Part shown: one piece after another, positions 20,054 through 29,000 of the stretch | How the letters are laid out: each line of letters opens with the position of its first letter | Numbering within the stretch: position 1 is the first letter of the stretch | Source: Diadema antillarum | Lineage: Eukaryota | NCBI RefSeq assembly: GCF_040938485.1 | Contig: NW_027271517.1 | Span: 248,001-312,000, forward strand | Reading direction: 5' to 3' | DNA length: 64,000 nucleotides | Made by a program: the position numbers and the translations under genes | Notes under the pieces: model-generated | Databases searched by the model: none | What the model saw: the letters and a program-made list of their open reading frames with translations, nothing else | What the model was told of the DNA's origin: nothing

Positions 20054-23000
20054 CTATCTTGATAATCTTTTCCTCTTCCTTGCCGAGAGTCGCACAATTT
20101 GTGGAAAGCTCTCTGCATCGCTCCTGAGATAAACAAACAAAAGTGATATAGAGGGAGAGAGGAAGAGAGGGAGATAATAATAATAGTCATAATAAACTGC
20201 AAATGCTCCTTCAGAAAGAGTGTACTGAACATTCATCAAATACCATCACTTACAGGTTGCTTGTACAACTCTCAAATCTACATGTACATCATAATGCAAC
20301 AAAAAGAAAGTCTTCTTTTCCTTGGCTAGATTTATAAAATTGGTGTTTTACGCCGTAAACATAATTTGTAACAACCCTGCTTGTCCTCTCAAATATCCAT
20401 GAGAATTACCTGAAATATCAAGTTACTACATTTCATTGCATGCATGGACACCTTGATAAATCTACCTGAAATCTAAATAAGGGCATTTCACTAACTGAAA
20501 AAGAATTAATATAATGATTGTCTTACGCATCATTGCTGCCAACGCCATCTTCGTTGAAGTCCAACATACGACGCACATTGGCCCTATCTTTCATCGGGGA
20601 ACCTGCGCCTGGTCTTGCTCTCCTCTGCATGTTGGTTCCCAGGGGAGGAGTTGCTGCATATCCAGAGTGCGAGTCTTTGAAGACACCATACCTCCTCGGG
20701 GAGCGTCTGAGGTCGCTCCCTTCAGCGTGATGATTGGTCGCCTTGTTTGGCAAACAATCGGGAACGGACGGCTTCACGGGTGAGTGTGAGGGATTTCTGT
20801 CAACCTTCATCCCTGCCTCAGAGTTGGCACAATCATTGGAACTGGGTTGAGTTGCTTGCTTACATGTATCTGCACCACACATATTCCTCCTTAATCGCAA
20901 ATATCTAGGGCTAGTTCTTACAGCTTGGGTCTGAATTGCTGTGTAGTCTTTGGTGAATGCGTTTCTGCAAATTTCTGGAGACGGCGTGGAGGTTTTCTTG
21001 TCCGATGACGCTGGCGTTTGACGTCTCTGCTTGCCTGGTGATAAGTCTGAATTACTGTCGTAAATACAGGACTGTGCTTCTTGGCATCTGCTTCTAGTTG
21101 ACATGGAAGGGGAGCTGTTAAGAATGTTATCCATGGCTGTGCGTGGCACAGGGGAGGAGGTCAATGACTTCAGGCTGTCCAGATTTCTCAGCCTCCTGAC
21201 GACCACCACGGATGGACGGGTGTCTGATTGTTCATCTTCAGAGTCTGGGATGATCGTTTCTGTGGAATGATCATTTGATGCTTGCACTGTTCCCGACTTC
21301 TCCTGAGGTTTTCCATCATCTTTGGTTGCTGCGCTCTCTCTTGGCGGTGACCCTCCGTTAGACATCCATCTGTCGTTAACATGCACAAATTTTGAGATGT
21401 CGGCATTGTCTGCACTGTGGCTGCGCTCTGACAAATCCTCATCCGTTTCTGCGCACATGGTATGGCCTCTTGACATGTTCCCTTTACCTGGATCAGTAGT
21501 TTCTTCACTTGCATTGATAAGTGCATTATCTGACCAGGAGGCCACCCTTGATCTGGTGATTACCCCACCTCTGGGAGATCGTCTCCTGCCGTGTATCAGG
21601 GATTCACACTGTTTTGATGGCATTCCTGTACCATGTCCTTCAGATGCAGCTCCCTTCACTCGCTTTCTTGGGGACCTTCGCAGATTGGGAGTACCACTGT
21701 GAAATGACTCCACAGCTCCATTCTGAACATCATTCTTTCCACAATTCATAGAGGGAGGTGCAAAATCTTCTGGCTGGTTCTCTTGCCACATTGATTCCTG
21801 GCTGCCCTTCTTGCTTGACAGTCTCAGCGATCTGCGCTGCACCACATTCACATTTCTTTGGTTGAATGCCATTTCCATGGCAACATCATCTACCATGACA
21901 ACATGGTCTTCTGGAGGAGCAACCCCTCTTGCATCACTTTCTCTCTGGTCTTCAGCATCCTCTGACTCTGCATCATCACTTTCCTCTCTCACGGTGAGCA
22001 CTGGGTCAACATCATCAGGATTGAGACAAGGGGAGACGTTACTAGGACCGGCGACGTCGTCAGGAATGGGATTAGGAGGAATACTGCTCATGATGTCTGC
22101 ACCCTCTTTGGCAAACATTGCAACATCATCTTCTATCTCCTGCACATCATCTGCTCCCCCTTGTGGTTGGTCTCTGTGATCCGCTGGATCGTCCTCCACC
22201 ACTTCTACATCGTCCGGCTTGTTTTTAACAGTCTGTGGGTGGGGTACTTCCTCCAGACACAGAACATCGTCTGGGCTGTACCTTGAAGCATCTGAAGGAC
22301 TTGCTTGTCTGTTCATCTGTTCCTGATGCAGAATGACTTCATCAGAGTCCTGTGAAAAATGAAAGATTCAAAAGGCAATGATGATATTGATAAAGTTGGG
22401 CATTGCATACTTTCTCCAGCAACTCTGCCTTAAGCTCTCAAAACACAAAATAAAATATGATATAATATACAAGCCAGTGGAGCCACTTCCTGATCGTTGA
22501 TCCAACTTGGGCATCACCCTGGTAACCAGGAAATCATTTGAATAAAAGCTGTAACATTTTCTGGACAAAAACCTAATATTGCAATCTGATTGCATGCTGT
22601 GACTGAAGGAACAAAGCAGGAGCATCATTAAAGTTACAAAGAGAACAATACTCTGGGCAAGTACAAGGAAGTACAGGAAAATACAGGGAATGGCATGATT
22701 CAAAGGGTGTGTTCGAGCGCTTTCCTAAAGCGAACTGTACCGTACCGTACCCACGCCAGAGGAGCGTTCGAACGCTCCTAAAGTGTACCGTACCGTACTG
22801 TACCGAGCCAAAAGTGGACCACTTCCCGATGTGTTCCAAAAGCGTACCAAAGCGTACCAAAAGTTCGGCTGTAAAGCATGCGCGTATCATGCGCATACGT
22901 CACAATGCTATAACATCATTCTCGTTGTTCGGGACAGCTGTCAGTAGTTCAAGTGCCAGGTGGATGACATTCTTCCTAAAAATGCGTGACCTTTACTAAA

Positions 23001-26000
23001 CATAACTCGTGAGGAACGCTTTCTCAACAGAGCGCTCGAACTCTCCCCAACTGGCATGGTACGGTACGGTACGCTTTAGTTCAGTTCGCTTTGGTTCGCT
23101 TAAGGTCTGAATTGCTGTGTAGTCTTTGGTGAATGCGTTTCTGCAAATTTCTGGAGACGGCGTGGAGGTTTTCTTGTCCGATGACGCTGGCGTTTGACGT
23201 CTCTGCTTGCCTGGTGATAAGTCTGAATTACTGTCGTAAATACAGGACTGTGCTTCTTGGCATCTGCTTCTAGTTGACATGGAAGGGGAGCTGTTAAGAA
23301 TGTTATCCATGGCTGTGCGTGGCACAGGGGAGGAGGTCAATGACTTCAGGCTGTCCAGATTTCTCAGCCTCCTGACGACCACCACGGATGGACGGGTGTC
23401 TGATTGTTCATCTTCAGAGTCTGGGATGATCGTTTCTGTGGAATGATCATTTGATGCTTGCACTGTTCCCGACTTCTCCTGAGGTTTTCCATCATCTTTG
23501 GTTGCTGCGCTCTCTCTTGGCGGTGACCCTCCGTTAGACATCCATCTGTCGTTAACATGCACAAATTTTGAGATGTCGGCATTGTCTGCACTGTGGCTGC
23601 GCTCTGACAAATCCTCATCCGTTTCTGCGCACATGGTATGGCCTCTTGACATGTTCCCTTTACCTGGATCAGTAGTTTCTTCACTTGCATTGATAAGTGC
23701 ATTATCTGACCAGGAGGCCACCCTTGATCTGGTGATTACCCCACCTCTGGGAGATCGTCTCCTGCCGTGTATCAGGGATTCACACTGTTTTGATGGCATT
23801 CCTGTACCATGTCCTTCAGATGCAGCTCCCTTCACTCGCTTTCTTGGGGACCTTCGCAGATTGGGAGTACCACTGTGAAATGACTCCACAGCTCCATTCT
23901 GAACATCATTCTTTCCACAATTCATAGAGGGAGGTGCAAAATCTTCTGGCTGGTTCTCTTGCCACATTGATTCCTGGCTGCCCTTCTTGCTTGACAGTCT
24001 CAGCGATCTGCGCTGCACCACATTCACATTTCTTTGGTTGAATGCCATTTCCATGGCAACATCATCTACCATGACAACATGGTCTTCTGGAGGAGCAACC
24101 CCTCTTGCATCACTTTCTCTCTGGTCTTCAGCATCCTCTGACTCTGCATCATCACTTTCCTCTCTCACGGTGAGCACTGGGTCAACATCATCAGGATTGA
24201 GACAAGGGGAGACGTTACTAGGACCGGCGACGTCGTCAGGAATGGGATTAGGAGGAATACTGCTCATGATGTCTGCACCCTCTTTGGCAAACATTGCAAC
24301 ATCATCTTCTATCTCCTGCACATCATCTGCTCCCCCTTGTGGTTGGTCTCTGTGATCCGCTGGATCGTCCTCCACCACTTCTACATCGTCCGGCTTGTTT
24401 TTAACAGTCTGTGGGTGGGGTACTTCCTCCAGACACAGAACATCGTCTGGGCTGTACCTTGAAGCATCTGAAGGACTTGCTTGTCTGTTCATCTGTTCCT
24501 GATGCAGAATGACTTCATCAGAGTCCTGTGAAAAATGAAAGATTCAAAAGGCAATGATGATATTGATAAAGTTGGGCATTGCATACTTTCTCCAGCAACT
24601 CTGCCTTAAGCTCTCAAAACACAAAATAAAATATGATATAATATACAAGCCAGTGGAGCCACTTCCTGATCGTTGATCCAACTTGGGCATCACCCTGGTA
24701 ACCAGGAAATCATTTGAATAAAAGCTGTAACATTTTCTGGACAAAAACCTAATATTGCAATCTGATTGCATGCTGTGACTGAAGGAACAAAGCAGGAGCA
24801 TCATTAAAGTTACAAAGAGAACAATACTCTGGGCAAGTACAAGGAAGTACAGGAAAATACAGGGAATGGCATGATTCAAAGGGTGTGTTCGAGCGCTTTC
24901 CTAAAGCGAACTGTACCGTACCGTACCCACGCCAGAGGAGCGTTCGAACGCTCCTAAAGTGTACCGTACCGTACTGTACCGAGCCAAAAGTGGACCACTT
25001 CCCGATGTGTTCCAAAAGCGTACCAAAGCGTACCAAAAGTTCGGCTGTAAAGCATGCGCGTATCATGCGCATACGTCACAATGCTATAACATCATTCTCG
25101 TTGTTCGGGACAGCTGTCAGTAGTTCAAGTGCCAGGTGGATGACATTCTTCCTAAAAATGCGTGACCTTTACTAAACATAACTCGTGAGGAACGCTTTCT
25201 CAACAGAGCGCTCGAACTCTCCCCAACTGGCATGGTACGGTACGGTACGCTTTAGTTCAGTTCGCTTTGGTTCGCTTAAGAGCACTCGAACGCACCCAAA
25301 TACACACAAATATTGGTCCAGCTGATCCAGCTGATTAGGATTTGAACAGGAACCTGCAATGGTCTGAGACAGATGCACTCTCCACTGAGCCAGCACTGAC
25401 ACAAGGCTTGCCATCATGCCATGCCTTACCTCTTTGTCGGAGGCTACCACAATCGCTGCCTCGTTGTCTTCATCATCCGGATCACTTTCACTGGACTCAC
25501 TCCAAGTTCCTGTATCCCATATGGTGCTCAGCTGACTTGTAACAAGCTGCAAAGATATGATTTAATATGATTAGATTATTTCATATTTTTTTTATCTTCT
25601 TTTTTTTTAATGAGAGAGAACAGCACATGCGTCTTGGAACAGTTTCAGAATTTTTCCTCTGATCATTGTAGTTGGAGTTTGTAATACATAACAACCTGTA
25701 ATATGATCCAGCCATGACCCTCAGATAATGACATTTTTTGCTACATTTGATGAATTTTGATACATTCTAGCACATACAACTTTCACTCAAAGTGATTTTC
25801 CTCTGTCTAGGAAATTATTTTTTTTTTCCATTTCTTTCCAGATTTTTCCAGAGGTAAAATTGTGAGCACAGGACACATTACTATGAAAATTCAATGTTAC
25901 AAGTGCATACTTCATATCTGTACAGCATTATGCATGGTCAATACCATTCAATCTGAGAAATGCATTCCCATACCATGTTGTGAAATGCCACAGCAAGAAG

Positions 26001-29000
26001 AGGCAAGTTTGAAGTCCAGTTATGGCAGAATGCTGTGTATAAAGCTTTAGAAGCAGATATGGTAGGTGTGGTATCTTGTCACATACAGAGCATCTTTCAT
26101 TATACCAGTGTTATCTCATATCCAGACCACAATTTTGGTAGCTCCTGCTCCACTGTGTGCGTGTGATTCACTCACCTCCTGCAGTTGGTCAAGCAGATCA
26201 TGGGAGGCCACCTGTAGCAGATAGTTGGTCAGTTGACCAGGGACTGCCTCTTGCGGGATCCTCTGCATCAAGTCTGGGCAGTGGTCAGTCAACCAGGTTC
26301 TGATGTCCTCTGGTGGAGACACGCCCAGCATGACCTGGTCGGGATAGATATGGTCAGAGGTCATAATCATCATCATCATATGATCATCACCATCTCCACC
26401 ATCATTAATCATCACCACCATCACCATCACCATCATCATCACCACCATCACCATCATCATCATCATCATCATCATCATCACCATCATCATATGATCACCA
26501 CCACTGCCNNNNNNNNNNNNNNNNNNNNNNNNNNNNNNNNNNNNNNNNNNNNNNNNNNNNNNNNNNNNNNNNNNNNNNNNNNNNNNNNNNNNNNNNNNNN
26601 NNNNNNNNNNNNNNNNNNNNNNNNNNNNNNNNNNNNNNNNNNNNNNNNNNNNNNCAACAACCACCATCTTCACCACCACCACCCCCAACACCAACACCAC
26701 ATCACTGTCATCACCACCATCACAACCACCACCATCATCATCACAATCACTACCACCACAACTAACATCATCACCATCATTATCATCATCATCATCTGTG
26801 GGGTTGGAGGTTTCACTTCCTATACAGTATATCCTTTCTCAAGGCTACCCGGTCTCTGATATCCATCAGGGTAAGAGTCTCTTATGTCCTTTGCAAGTTC
26901 CTCTTCTCAGGTCTTGTAGGGTCTGCCCCCTGTTCTCAAACCAGACCCTGAGAGATTTGTAGCCTTCTGCAGCTAGTGGCTTTCATCTCTCCTTGTCACA
27001 CGCCCATATCACCTAAGCCTCTCAATCATTTCACATACTATCAATAAGATGTGTCTTTCTCCTCATGCGAGGGACACAGAGCAATCCAAATGTGGAAAGT
27101 TAAGATGACTATCAGATATTTTCTTAAAGACAACAGCAGTGTGATGACTCTGGTGTAAGATCTCAAACAAAATATCATCTAACTCTCTTTGAGTTATTAA
27201 AAAAAAATCGAACTATTATAACATTCATACCAATGGCATCAAAAATTAAACAAAACACCACATGATGACAGAAGACACGACATCATTCTCATTACTTGAT
27301 CCATCTTGCAATTTGATCACCCTTGAAAATTTATCGAAGGGATAGAAATTGATGGCTTCCAGGGCAGCAGAAAAAGATGTCAGAGTTGAATCCTTACTGG
27401 CTGTCATCCAATTTGTATAAAATATGAAAGCTGGCAGGGAAAGAGGGGAGAGAGAGATAGAAACTGACCTGGATGAGAGCTGCAAGTTCTTCCGCGTGAG
27501 TGGAGTGGAGAACAGATCTGGCTATCCGACAGAGACACATGTACTTGAGGTAAGATGTGGGCGTCCATGGAGATGAGTGAGTCTGAATCACACGGCTGTA
27601 GGGAAGGGGTGGGGTGGTGCAGTTATCAGCATCTATCGAACACATATCAACCTTGTTCATACACTGTGCTCAGAGATTTGAAAGCGAGTGATCAAGCATA
27701 ATCCAAAAATGGCTATTGTAATCTTGTTTCTTCATCCTCTTTACAGCACCAACTTGAATGTAGCACAACAGAAGGTTAGAAAACGAAATAAAAATTGGAA
27801 AATCTTTCCTGTTCTCCAGTGCTCGCCACACATGTGGAAACACAAGAACAGAGGTAGGTGTGACAGTATGTATTTAAAAGGGCGTGTGTGTGCGGAAACG
27901 TTCCCTGACATAGCAGAAGAGCTATAAAAATGACACTCATAAAAACACACACACATGTACTGGCTGATTCCCATCACTGCTTATAGTAGCCTGGATCTGC
28001 CAGGTAGCATGTGGAGAGAGGTCTCCTACCCCTCCACAGAGATGTCAGACATCCTACCTGTTTCTAATCACATTTTGCGTGCTAACCATTGGACATTCCT
28101 GTTGTTGAAACGAAAAAGTTTCTTACACAACTTAAAAGGAATTTCTTGTAGATTTATACCACTCCTGCACAAGTTTGGTCTTTCTTTTATGAATATGAAA
28201 AGGAACGTCCCAGTTAAGCAAAAGCTCAAGCTCGTTTTACAGAGCTTCGAAAATCGTAAGCAATTGCTAGCAAGAACAAGCAAAAGGTCTGTTTTATGCA
28301 TACATTTTTTAAGCAAATGCTTGGTCTCTAAGCAACTGCTTGCGGGGCAGTAAGCAATTGCTTGTGTTTGCTAGCAGAAGCTTTTGCTCGCAAGCAATTG
28401 CTAGTTTTTATGCATGCGGCCCATTGCCTACTCACCGGAGTACAGGGAGCAGGAAGTCGGGGTCGCCCTGTGCGGGATTCCGCAGCTGGAGCACCACGTC
28501 CATGAGGGCGCCATCACCATCTGCCAATAAAGAGATCCTGGACAGCAGATGTTTGGATATCTGTTCCACATCCCCTCCCTTCCTGGATAAGAGACATTTT
28601 GGTATCACATATTTTTAACAAAAAGTCCTCATCACTTGCTATCACAATTAAAACAGTTGGTTTACGTCTTTTAAAATAAATTTATTCTTCATTGTCCTTC
28701 AGTAAGTTCTTATTCATGTGTAATTACAACAAATGCTTTACAAATAGATTGGCAACAAAAATATGCTTCGGACGTGCCATTTAACTTGATTTAATCACAC
28801 ATTCAAATTAATACATGAATAAATGTATGAACATCGCATGGTTACCTTGCCACAAGAGCATTTACACTGATGTGGATAGACAGCAAGGCAGTCATGTGAC
28901 TTCTGTAAACATCGCCCTCTTTGATACTCTCCTGAATATGAGAAAGAGAGAGTGAGAGAGAGAGAGAGACAAACTAAAATAACATGTCATTAATCACTTT

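What the first reader, a model, noticed from the sequence alone, without database searches (positions are those of the whole stretch)
20929..25280. Identical 2176-bp tandem duplication with a breakpoint at the inner edge of a MITE TIR creates a chimeric truncating exon
Seen: the unit runs from inside the large exon through its acceptor and intron to the MITE, stopping exactly 17 bp (the TIR) short of the MITE end, with only ~1 bp of microhomology. In transcription order the first acceptor met (24525) leads to 473 native codons plus 35 MITE-derived codons and a stop. That product loses ~156 C-terminal residues, including RRMLDF and the basic RKRKRLSR end. The intact exon needs skipping to the second identical acceptor (22349). 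Read-through of the upstream exon's donor (25429) also enters the same MITE frame (ORF 25172-25552). Inference: a very recent, possibly transposase-linked duplication forming a competing-acceptor switch between full-length and truncated/NMD isoforms. Perfect identity also fits an assembly artefact, although a homology-free junction argues against a simple repeat mis-join.
Basis: partly seen in the sequence, partly recalled or inferred. Interest (0 to 1): 0.72.

Follow-up and report, generated by a model that had tools for sequence, protein, structure and literature searches.

The report
Perfect 2.2-kb duplication inside urchin gene
One of the two parental copies of an unnamed, fast-evolving sea-urchin gene carries an exact head-to-tail 2,176-base duplication that probably cripples that copy; this is an ordinary young structural variant (or, less likely, an assembly error), not a splicing switch.

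Summary
Window 20928-23103 and 23104-25279 are identical over 2,176 bp with 1 nt of junction microhomology. The unit covers 474 codons of a large minus-strand exon, its acceptor, the intron and 400 of 417 nt of a MITE.

The allelic contig C1770 has the locus in single copy with the same full MITE and no indel at either breakpoint. The duplication is therefore derived and on one haplotype only.

Alleles differ by 4-6% while the copies differ by 0%, which excludes a haplotype mis-join and argues against an ONT patch. No N lies at the junction, and no other such repeat occurs in 264 kb.

My estimates are about 0.74 for a real, very young heterozygous variant and about 0.2 for an artefact.

If the first acceptor is used, the product is truncated (35 MITE codons, then a stop) with no usable cryptic donor. 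That would be a likely null or hypomorphic allele. A regulated switch has no support.

The scan noted a similar one-haplotype duplication elsewhere in this genome (s1-220825).

The parts
20928..23103 (.). Duplication copy A (2,176 bp): 3' 1,422 nt... i.e. the first 474 codons of the large exon, its acceptor, 355 nt of intron and the MITE lacking its last 17 nt
   Evidence: exact identity at offset 2176; megablast 100% over 2,177 nt.
23104..25279 (.). Duplication copy B (2,176 bp), identical to copy A. Base 23104 (g) is the 1-nt microhomology; the junction is 23103|23104 (gcttaa[g]gtctgaatt).
24881..25297 (.). Complete 417-bp MITE in the intron. It has 17-nt ungapped terminal inverted repeats (GGGTGYGTTCGAGYGCT), AAA on both flanks, and folds as a long hairpin when single-stranded.
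   Evidence: family ends at query 22-438, 1,635 first-look candidates at about 91% identity; repeat alignment.: -85.2 kcal/mol, z = -6.9.
22705..23104 (.). Truncated MITE copy, 400 of 417 nt (the right 17-nt repeat is missing), abutting the exon sequence of copy B
   Evidence: blastn, query 1-400 at 100%.
20527..22349 (-). Intact large exon: 607 codons plus 2 nt, acceptor cag|GAC at 22349, donor GC|GTAAGA with the intron starting at 20526
   Evidence: The ORF is intact in the allele as well.
23104..24525 (-). Truncated second copy of the large exon (474 codons) behind an identical acceptor. It is met first in transcription and has no donor of its own.
   Evidence: (ORF 22996-24492).
22996..23103 (-). 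35 MITE-derived codons plus the TAG that end the chimeric reading frame
   Evidence: translation; no GT with a positive donor score before the stop, apart from 1.06 bits at the stop itself.
25430..25546 (-). Upstream exon (39 codons, ...AAIVVASDKE) with a strong donor GAG|GTAAGG. Inferred from the ORF and splice consensus only.
   Evidence: one search gives a donor score of 10.3 bits on a rough matrix.
20054..20123 (-). Last coding exon (..SDAESFPQIVRLSARKRKRLSR, then stop), inferred

Best explanation
This is a real, very young, heterozygous intragenic tandem duplication on one haplotype of the sequenced Diadema antillarum male.

How it arose (inferred). One replication or repair error re-copied 2,176 bp, most simply a template switch or an end-joining event using 1 nt of microhomology. 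One breakpoint lies in the large exon. The other lies 17 nt inside the right end of an intronic hairpin-forming MITE, where the terminal helix ends. The MITE structure may have favoured the break.

What it does (inferred). The gene encodes a fast-evolving, disordered, probably nuclear protein without detectable relatives. On this haplotype it now presents two identical acceptors.
- Use of the first one (24525) gives an exon with no donor. It reads through 35 MITE codons to a stop about 2.5 kb upstream of the last exon junction. The result is a truncated protein lacking about 156 C-terminal residues, or a transcript removed by nonsense-mediated decay.
- Use of the second one (22349) gives normal mRNA.

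The allele is therefore most likely null or hypomorphic, and it is carried opposite an intact allele.

Shown: the duplication, its absence from the allele, the reading frames and the splice motifs. Inferred: that reads support the junction, the mechanism of origin, and the splicing outcome.
For: - Exact 2,176-bp duplication with 1 nt of microhomology.
- The allelic contig C1770 is single-copy with the same full MITE and no indel at either breakpoint.
- The alleles differ by 3.8% in this stretch (111 mismatches in 2,925 aligned bases) and by 4-6% over the wider blast alignments. The copies differ by 0%, so they do not come from two haplotypes.
- The unit differs from the allele by only two indels, both in frame inside the exon. 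That is not an ONT error profile.
This is a hifiasm assembly of HiFi reads (mean 6.8 kb, about 11x per haplotype) from one male, with both haplotypes retained and zero gap length (PMC13511894).
- The junction has no N, and it is the only direct repeat of 97% identity or more and 250 bp or more in 264 kb of the contig.
- RagTag patch needs alignments of at least 50 kb and fills joins with query sequence (PMC9753292).
- Splice motifs and frames.
Against: No read-level evidence could be obtained.

Perfect identity and a homology-free junction are also what a blunt join of overlapping contig ends would give. The assembly did go through a patching step and low-coverage short-read polishing. Coverage per haplotype is low, at about 11x.

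No RNA evidence supports the gene model or either splicing outcome.
Confidence: 0.74

Rival explanations
1. Assembly artefact. The haplotype has one copy, and the second arose during assembly or post-processing. Possible routes are two HiFi contigs of the same haplotype overlapping by 2,176 bp being abutted at the RagTag patch step, or a chimeric or duplicated read being taken into the hifiasm path.
For: - The copies are perfectly identical and the junction is homology-free.
- The pipeline included RagTag patching with ONT data of other animals and Racon polishing with 6.1 Gb of MiSeq reads, and depth per haplotype is only about 11x.
- One copy ends inside a dispersed repeat, where assembly graphs tend to break.
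Against: - No N or foreign, error-rich sequence sits at the junction.
- The sequence on both sides has HiFi-like quality; the only indels against the allele are in frame.
- RagTag patch needs 50-kb alignments on both sides and treats overlapping targets as a separate case.
- A random chimeric read would not join two points 2.2 kb apart in direct orientation.
- hifiasm drops reads whose junction no other read supports (own knowledge).
- No second case occurs in 264 kb.
Confidence: 0.2
2. A selected or regulated competing-acceptor switch. On this view the duplication is maintained because the choice between the two identical acceptors tunes the ratio of full-length to truncated or decay-targeted isoforms.
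For: Only the anatomy: two identical acceptors, of which the first leads to a premature stop.
Against: - It is absent from the other allele of the same animal.
- Zero divergence between the copies means it is far younger than the allelic coalescence.
- The copies are identical, so there is nothing for a regulator to tell apart.
- The host exon is itself weakly constrained (allelic dN/dS 0.70).
Confidence: 0.03
3. A transposase-made break. A transposase acting on the MITE cut inside its right end, and repair against the sister chromatid produced the duplication.
For: The breakpoint is exactly 17 nt from the MITE end. P-element transposase is known to cut the non-transferred strand 17 nt inside the repeat (own knowledge, Beall and Rio 1997, not checked here).
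Against: - The flanks share only AAA, not the 7-9-bp target duplication of the P superfamily.
- Family copies are about 9% diverged, so the family looks old and probably inactive.
- It needs a second, independent break 2.2 kb away.
- The position is one of many that would have looked special after the fact.
Confidence: 0.03

Closest known systems
Intragenic (partial) tandem duplications as structural-variant alleles, for example exon duplications in human DMD or KMT2A partial tandem duplication (own knowledge)
   Same: It is a head-to-tail duplication of part of a gene including a splice site. Its junction has 0-2 nt of microhomology. It is heterozygous and disrupts or alters the product.
   Different: Here the unit starts inside an exon rather than in introns on both sides. 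The first copy of the exon therefore has no donor and runs into transposon sequence. No phenotype or transcript is known.
Replication-based template switching (FoSTeS/MMBIR) and end-joining models for tandem duplications (own knowledge)
   Same: There is a single junction with 1 nt of microhomology and no long homology, and one breakpoint lies in hairpin-forming DNA.
   Different: The mechanism is inferred from the junction alone. No templated insertion or complex rearrangement marks it.
Cis-competition of duplicated 3' splice sites in minigene experiments (Reed and Maniatis 1986, own knowledge)
   Same: Two identical acceptors with identical branch regions lie downstream of one donor.
   Different: This is a natural allele with 2.2 kb between the sites. 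The outcome has not been measured.
False duplications in long-read assemblies of heterozygous genomes
   Same: The assembly is known to be inflated by retained haplotypes (PMC13511894).
   Different: Those duplications are whole allelic contigs that differ by several percent. This one is tandem, 2.2 kb long and 100% identical.
Frameshifting 23-bp tandem duplication on one haplotype of another gene in this genome
   Same: It is an exact tandem duplication that breaks one parental copy of a gene in the same animal.
   Different: This one is about 100 times larger, includes a splice acceptor and ends in a MITE.

Membership tests
Heterozygous tandem duplication (real structural variant) | Two head-to-tail copies with a single novel junction | tested here: met
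Heterozygous tandem duplication (real structural variant) | The ancestral single-copy state is present on the other haplotype | tested here: met
   C1770 is single-copy and collinear across both breakpoints.
Heterozygous tandem duplication (real structural variant) | Reads span the junction, and each copy has full haplotype depth | not testable with these tools
Assembly false duplication by haplotype mis-join | The two copies carry the two haplotypes' differences | tested here: not met
   0 of 2,176 positions differ between the copies, against 111 mismatches in 2,925 bases versus the allele.
Assembly false duplication by gap fill or patch | A gap, patch or foreign low-quality sequence sits at the junction | tested here: inconclusive
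   There is no N at the junction, and the only indels against the allele are in frame. The patch coordinates (AGP) are not available.
MITE (non-autonomous DNA transposon) | Short element with terminal inverted repeats, present in many dispersed copies with the same ends | tested here: met
   417 bp with a 17-nt repeat (15/17 match). At least 40 scored copies on different contigs share the ends, out of 1,635 first-look candidates.
MITE (non-autonomous DNA transposon) | A target-site duplication that assigns a superfamily | tested here: inconclusive
   Only AAA is shared by both flanks of this copy.
Regulated alternative 3' splice site or decay-coupled splicing switch | The arrangement is conserved across alleles or species | tested here: not met
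   It is absent from the allelic contig.
Regulated alternative 3' splice site or decay-coupled splicing switch | Both isoforms are seen in RNA | not testable with these tools
   No reads were accessible, and short reads cannot tell the two acceptor junctions apart.
P-element-type cleavage (17-nt stagger) | A 7-9-bp target-site duplication and P-type ends | tested here: not met
   The flanks GATTCAAA and AAATACAC share only AAA.

The most novel reading that the evidence does not exclude
The duplication is real and was triggered by the MITE's own hairpin: the nascent strand folded back or stalled at the inner end of the 17-nt terminal helix and switched template. The resulting allele is expressed as a stable protein with a MITE-encoded C-terminus rather than being degraded. 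That would be a caught-in-the-act case of a transposon both causing a gene rearrangement and supplying a new coding end.
Probability: 0.07. Interest if true: 0.4.

Novelty: new member of a known kind. Interest (0 to 1): 0.17.

Why it matters
It matters little beyond this locus.

If real, it is one more heterozygous, probably damaging structural variant in a very polymorphic broadcast spawner, and a neat natural example of duplicated acceptors.

If an artefact, it flags a rare error type in GCA_040938485.1 that could mislead the gene model at this locus.

In practice, anyone using this gene model should take the single-copy allele on C1770 as the reference structure.

Tried and rejected
- Independent contigs through the protein collections: the 597-aa ORF and the 135-aa chimeric tail found nothing, so the species is not represented there.
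- Gene identity: Pfam found nothing except a chance-level PF20235 hit at E = 0.037 in the read-through ORF. HMMER against 1.84 billion representatives gave 0 hits. The Atlas gave only weak leads (0.80) to disordered BRCA1 and RAD51AP1 fragments.
- The spliced protein was not joined or searched. Exons were searched singly, by reference.
- MITE superfamily: no other copies could be fetched.
- The tRNA-like stretch beside the MITE gave no ARAGORN or Rfam hit.
- Haplotype mis-join was rejected because the copies are identical.
- Paralogy of C1770 was rejected in favour of allelism. The two contigs share the MITE and are collinear, and the paper reports 84% duplicated BUSCOs and a 703-Mb haploid estimate.
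- The N runs were left as they are. None lies inside the duplication.
Full report
**Observation**

A direct comparison at offset 2,176 shows an unbroken identity run of 2,177 nt from 20928 to 23104. megablast of the window against itself confirms it. The two copies are 20928-23103 and 23104-25279, and one shared g sits at the junction (gcttaa[g]gtctgaatt). None of the three N runs of the window lies inside; I left them as they are.

**Anatomy**

The gene is on the minus strand. The exon model below rests on ORFs and splice consensus only.

- An upstream exon runs from 25546 to 25430 (39 codons) and ends GAG|GTAAGG.
- The intron holds a SINE-like stretch and a 417-bp MITE at 24881-25297. The MITE ends are fixed by the family: a search of the whole genome gave 1,635 first-look candidates, and most of the 40 scored copies (about 91% identical) match exactly this span.
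- The acceptor reads ttttcacag|GAC, so the large exon starts at 22349 and, in the duplicate, at 24525.
- The large exon runs to 20527 (607 codons plus 2 nt, donor GC|GTAAGA). A last coding exon at 20123-20054 ends RKRKRLSR.

The duplicated unit therefore holds the first 474 codons of the large exon, its acceptor, the 3' part of the intron and 400 of the 417 MITE bases. The missing 17 nt are the ungapped terminal repeat. Gapped inverted-repeat similarity continues for about 70-90 nt, so the 'inner edge of the TIR' is a soft landmark.

Reading through the donor at 25429 also reaches the same MITE frame.

**Where the window comes from**

Earlier notes of this scan named Diadema. I checked this. 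G000 has 1,754,659,819 bases, exactly the size given for D. antillarum GCA_040938485.1 (PMC13511894).

That assembly was made as follows:
- hifiasm 0.19.8 in default mode on HiFi reads (mean 6.8 kb, modal depth about 11x on the uncollapsed assembly) from the sperm of one male;
- RagTag patching with Nanopore data of two other animals;
- Racon polishing with 6.1 Gb of MiSeq reads.

It has zero gap length, so the N runs in the window are masks. It retains both haplotypes: 84% of BUSCOs are duplicated, against a 703-Mb haploid estimate.

**The other allele**

A search of the genome with 2.4 kb of the unit found only three places: the two copies here and one on contig C1770 at 95% identity. I fetched 30 kb of C1770.
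- It is collinear with the window from 15000 to at least 31930.
- It holds the unit once.
- It carries the same MITE in full, at 99% identity.
- It aligns without any indel across both breakpoints when the window is reduced to one copy.

The duplication is therefore derived and sits on one haplotype.

**Real or artefact**

This could not be settled with reads. Two protein word searches meant to pick up independent contigs of this species found nothing.

The indirect evidence favours a real variant:
- The alleles differ by 3.8-6% while the copies differ at 0 of 2,176 positions, so the copies do not come from two haplotypes.
- The unit differs from the allele by only two indels, of 6 and 3 nt, both in frame in the exon. 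This does not look like Nanopore-derived patch sequence.
- The junction carries no N.
- RagTag patch needs 50-kb alignments near the contig ends and bridges non-overlapping targets with query sequence (PMC9753292).
- In 264 kb of this contig, this is the only direct repeat of at least 250 bp at 97% identity or more.
- A homology-free junction inside a gapless HiFi contig implies that reads carried it. A random chimeric read would not join two points 2.2 kb apart in direct orientation.

Against this, a blunt join of two overlapping contig ends of the same haplotype would look exactly like this, and depth per haplotype is low. I put a real variant at about 0.74 and an artefact at about 0.2.

**The gene**

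The large exon is a real coding sequence.
- It is open for 607 codons here and 610 in the allele.
- It evolves fast: 69 of 607 residues differ between the two alleles, and dN/dS is 0.70.
- It has no Pfam domain, no hit in the word search and none among 1.84 billion representatives with HMMER.
- The Atlas gives only weak likeness to disordered stretches of BRCA1 and RAD51AP1 (score 0.80).

I did not test that beyond the exons near the duplication.

**Consequences (inferred)**

On the duplicated haplotype the donor at 25429 meets two acceptors that are identical together with about 750 nt upstream and 1.4 kb downstream of them.

The first acceptor (24525) opens an exon without a donor. A rough donor matrix of my own finds no usable GT between the junction and the MITE stop; all score below 1.1 bits, against 10.3 for the upstream exon's donor. 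The better cryptic donors inside the exon are out of phase. Such a transcript would carry a stop about 2.5 kb before the last exon junction. It would be a decay target, or would give a protein lacking about 156 C-terminal residues.

The second acceptor gives normal mRNA. Proximity and order of transcription favour the first acceptor (own knowledge), so the allele is probably null or weak and sits opposite an intact one.

Nothing suggests a regulated switch. The arrangement is private to one allele, has had no time to diverge, and offers a regulator nothing to distinguish.

The exon-MITE junction and allelic imbalance are the usable read-outs.

**Origin (inferred)**

One junction with 1 nt of microhomology fits a template switch or end joining. 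The MITE folds as single-stranded DNA into a long hairpin (-85.2 kcal/mol, z = -6.9), and the break lies where its 17-nt terminal helix ends. Structure-induced stalling is therefore plausible but unproven.

A transposase cut is unlikely. The only known 17-nt stagger belongs to P elements (own knowledge), whose 7-9-bp target duplication is not present here, and the family looks old (about 9% divergence).

**Verdict**

This is an ordinary kind of event, so interest is low.

Noticed in passing
window 20527-22349 (-) versus C1770:275600-277429: The two alleles of the large exon differ at 69 of 607 residues and by two in-frame indels (dN/dS 0.70). The exon has no detectable relative in 1.84 billion protein representatives. 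It is a very fast-evolving, disordered, possibly lineage-restricted gene.
   Followed up: partly
window 20540-20575 (-) and 20054-20123 (-): The C-terminal motifs lost in the truncated form (..NVRRMLDF.. and ..RKRKRLSR) loosely recall a PCNA-interaction or degron box followed by a nuclear localisation signal. This is a resemblance from memory only and was not tested.
   Followed up: no
window 25300-25410 (-): A tRNA-like or SINE-like stretch (..GGCTCAGTGG....GGTTCCTGTTCAAATCC..) lies directly between the exon's donor and the MITE. ARAGORN and Rfam found nothing there.
   Followed up: partly
window 26360-26810: A CAT/CAC (His- or Met/Val-coding) microsatellite, interrupted by a masked N run at 26509-26654, lies next to what looks like another exon of the same gene (ORF 26116-26700, minus strand).
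   Followed up: no
L024:609-1368 (C629:218609-219368, outside the window): A 761-bp stretch matches its own reverse complement at 97.8%, so it is a near-perfect palindrome.
   Followed up: no
G000:C125:513650-515337: This is a cluster of at least five whole or partial copies of the same MITE family, in both orientations, within 1.7 kb. It is a nested or tandem MITE pile-up.
   Followed up: no
window 23103|23104, 20921-20928 and 25273-25280: The sequences just left of the two breakpoints share GCTTnnG (aGCTTggG and cGCTTaaG). This imperfect microhomology goes beyond the single shared base and may be chance.
   Followed up: no
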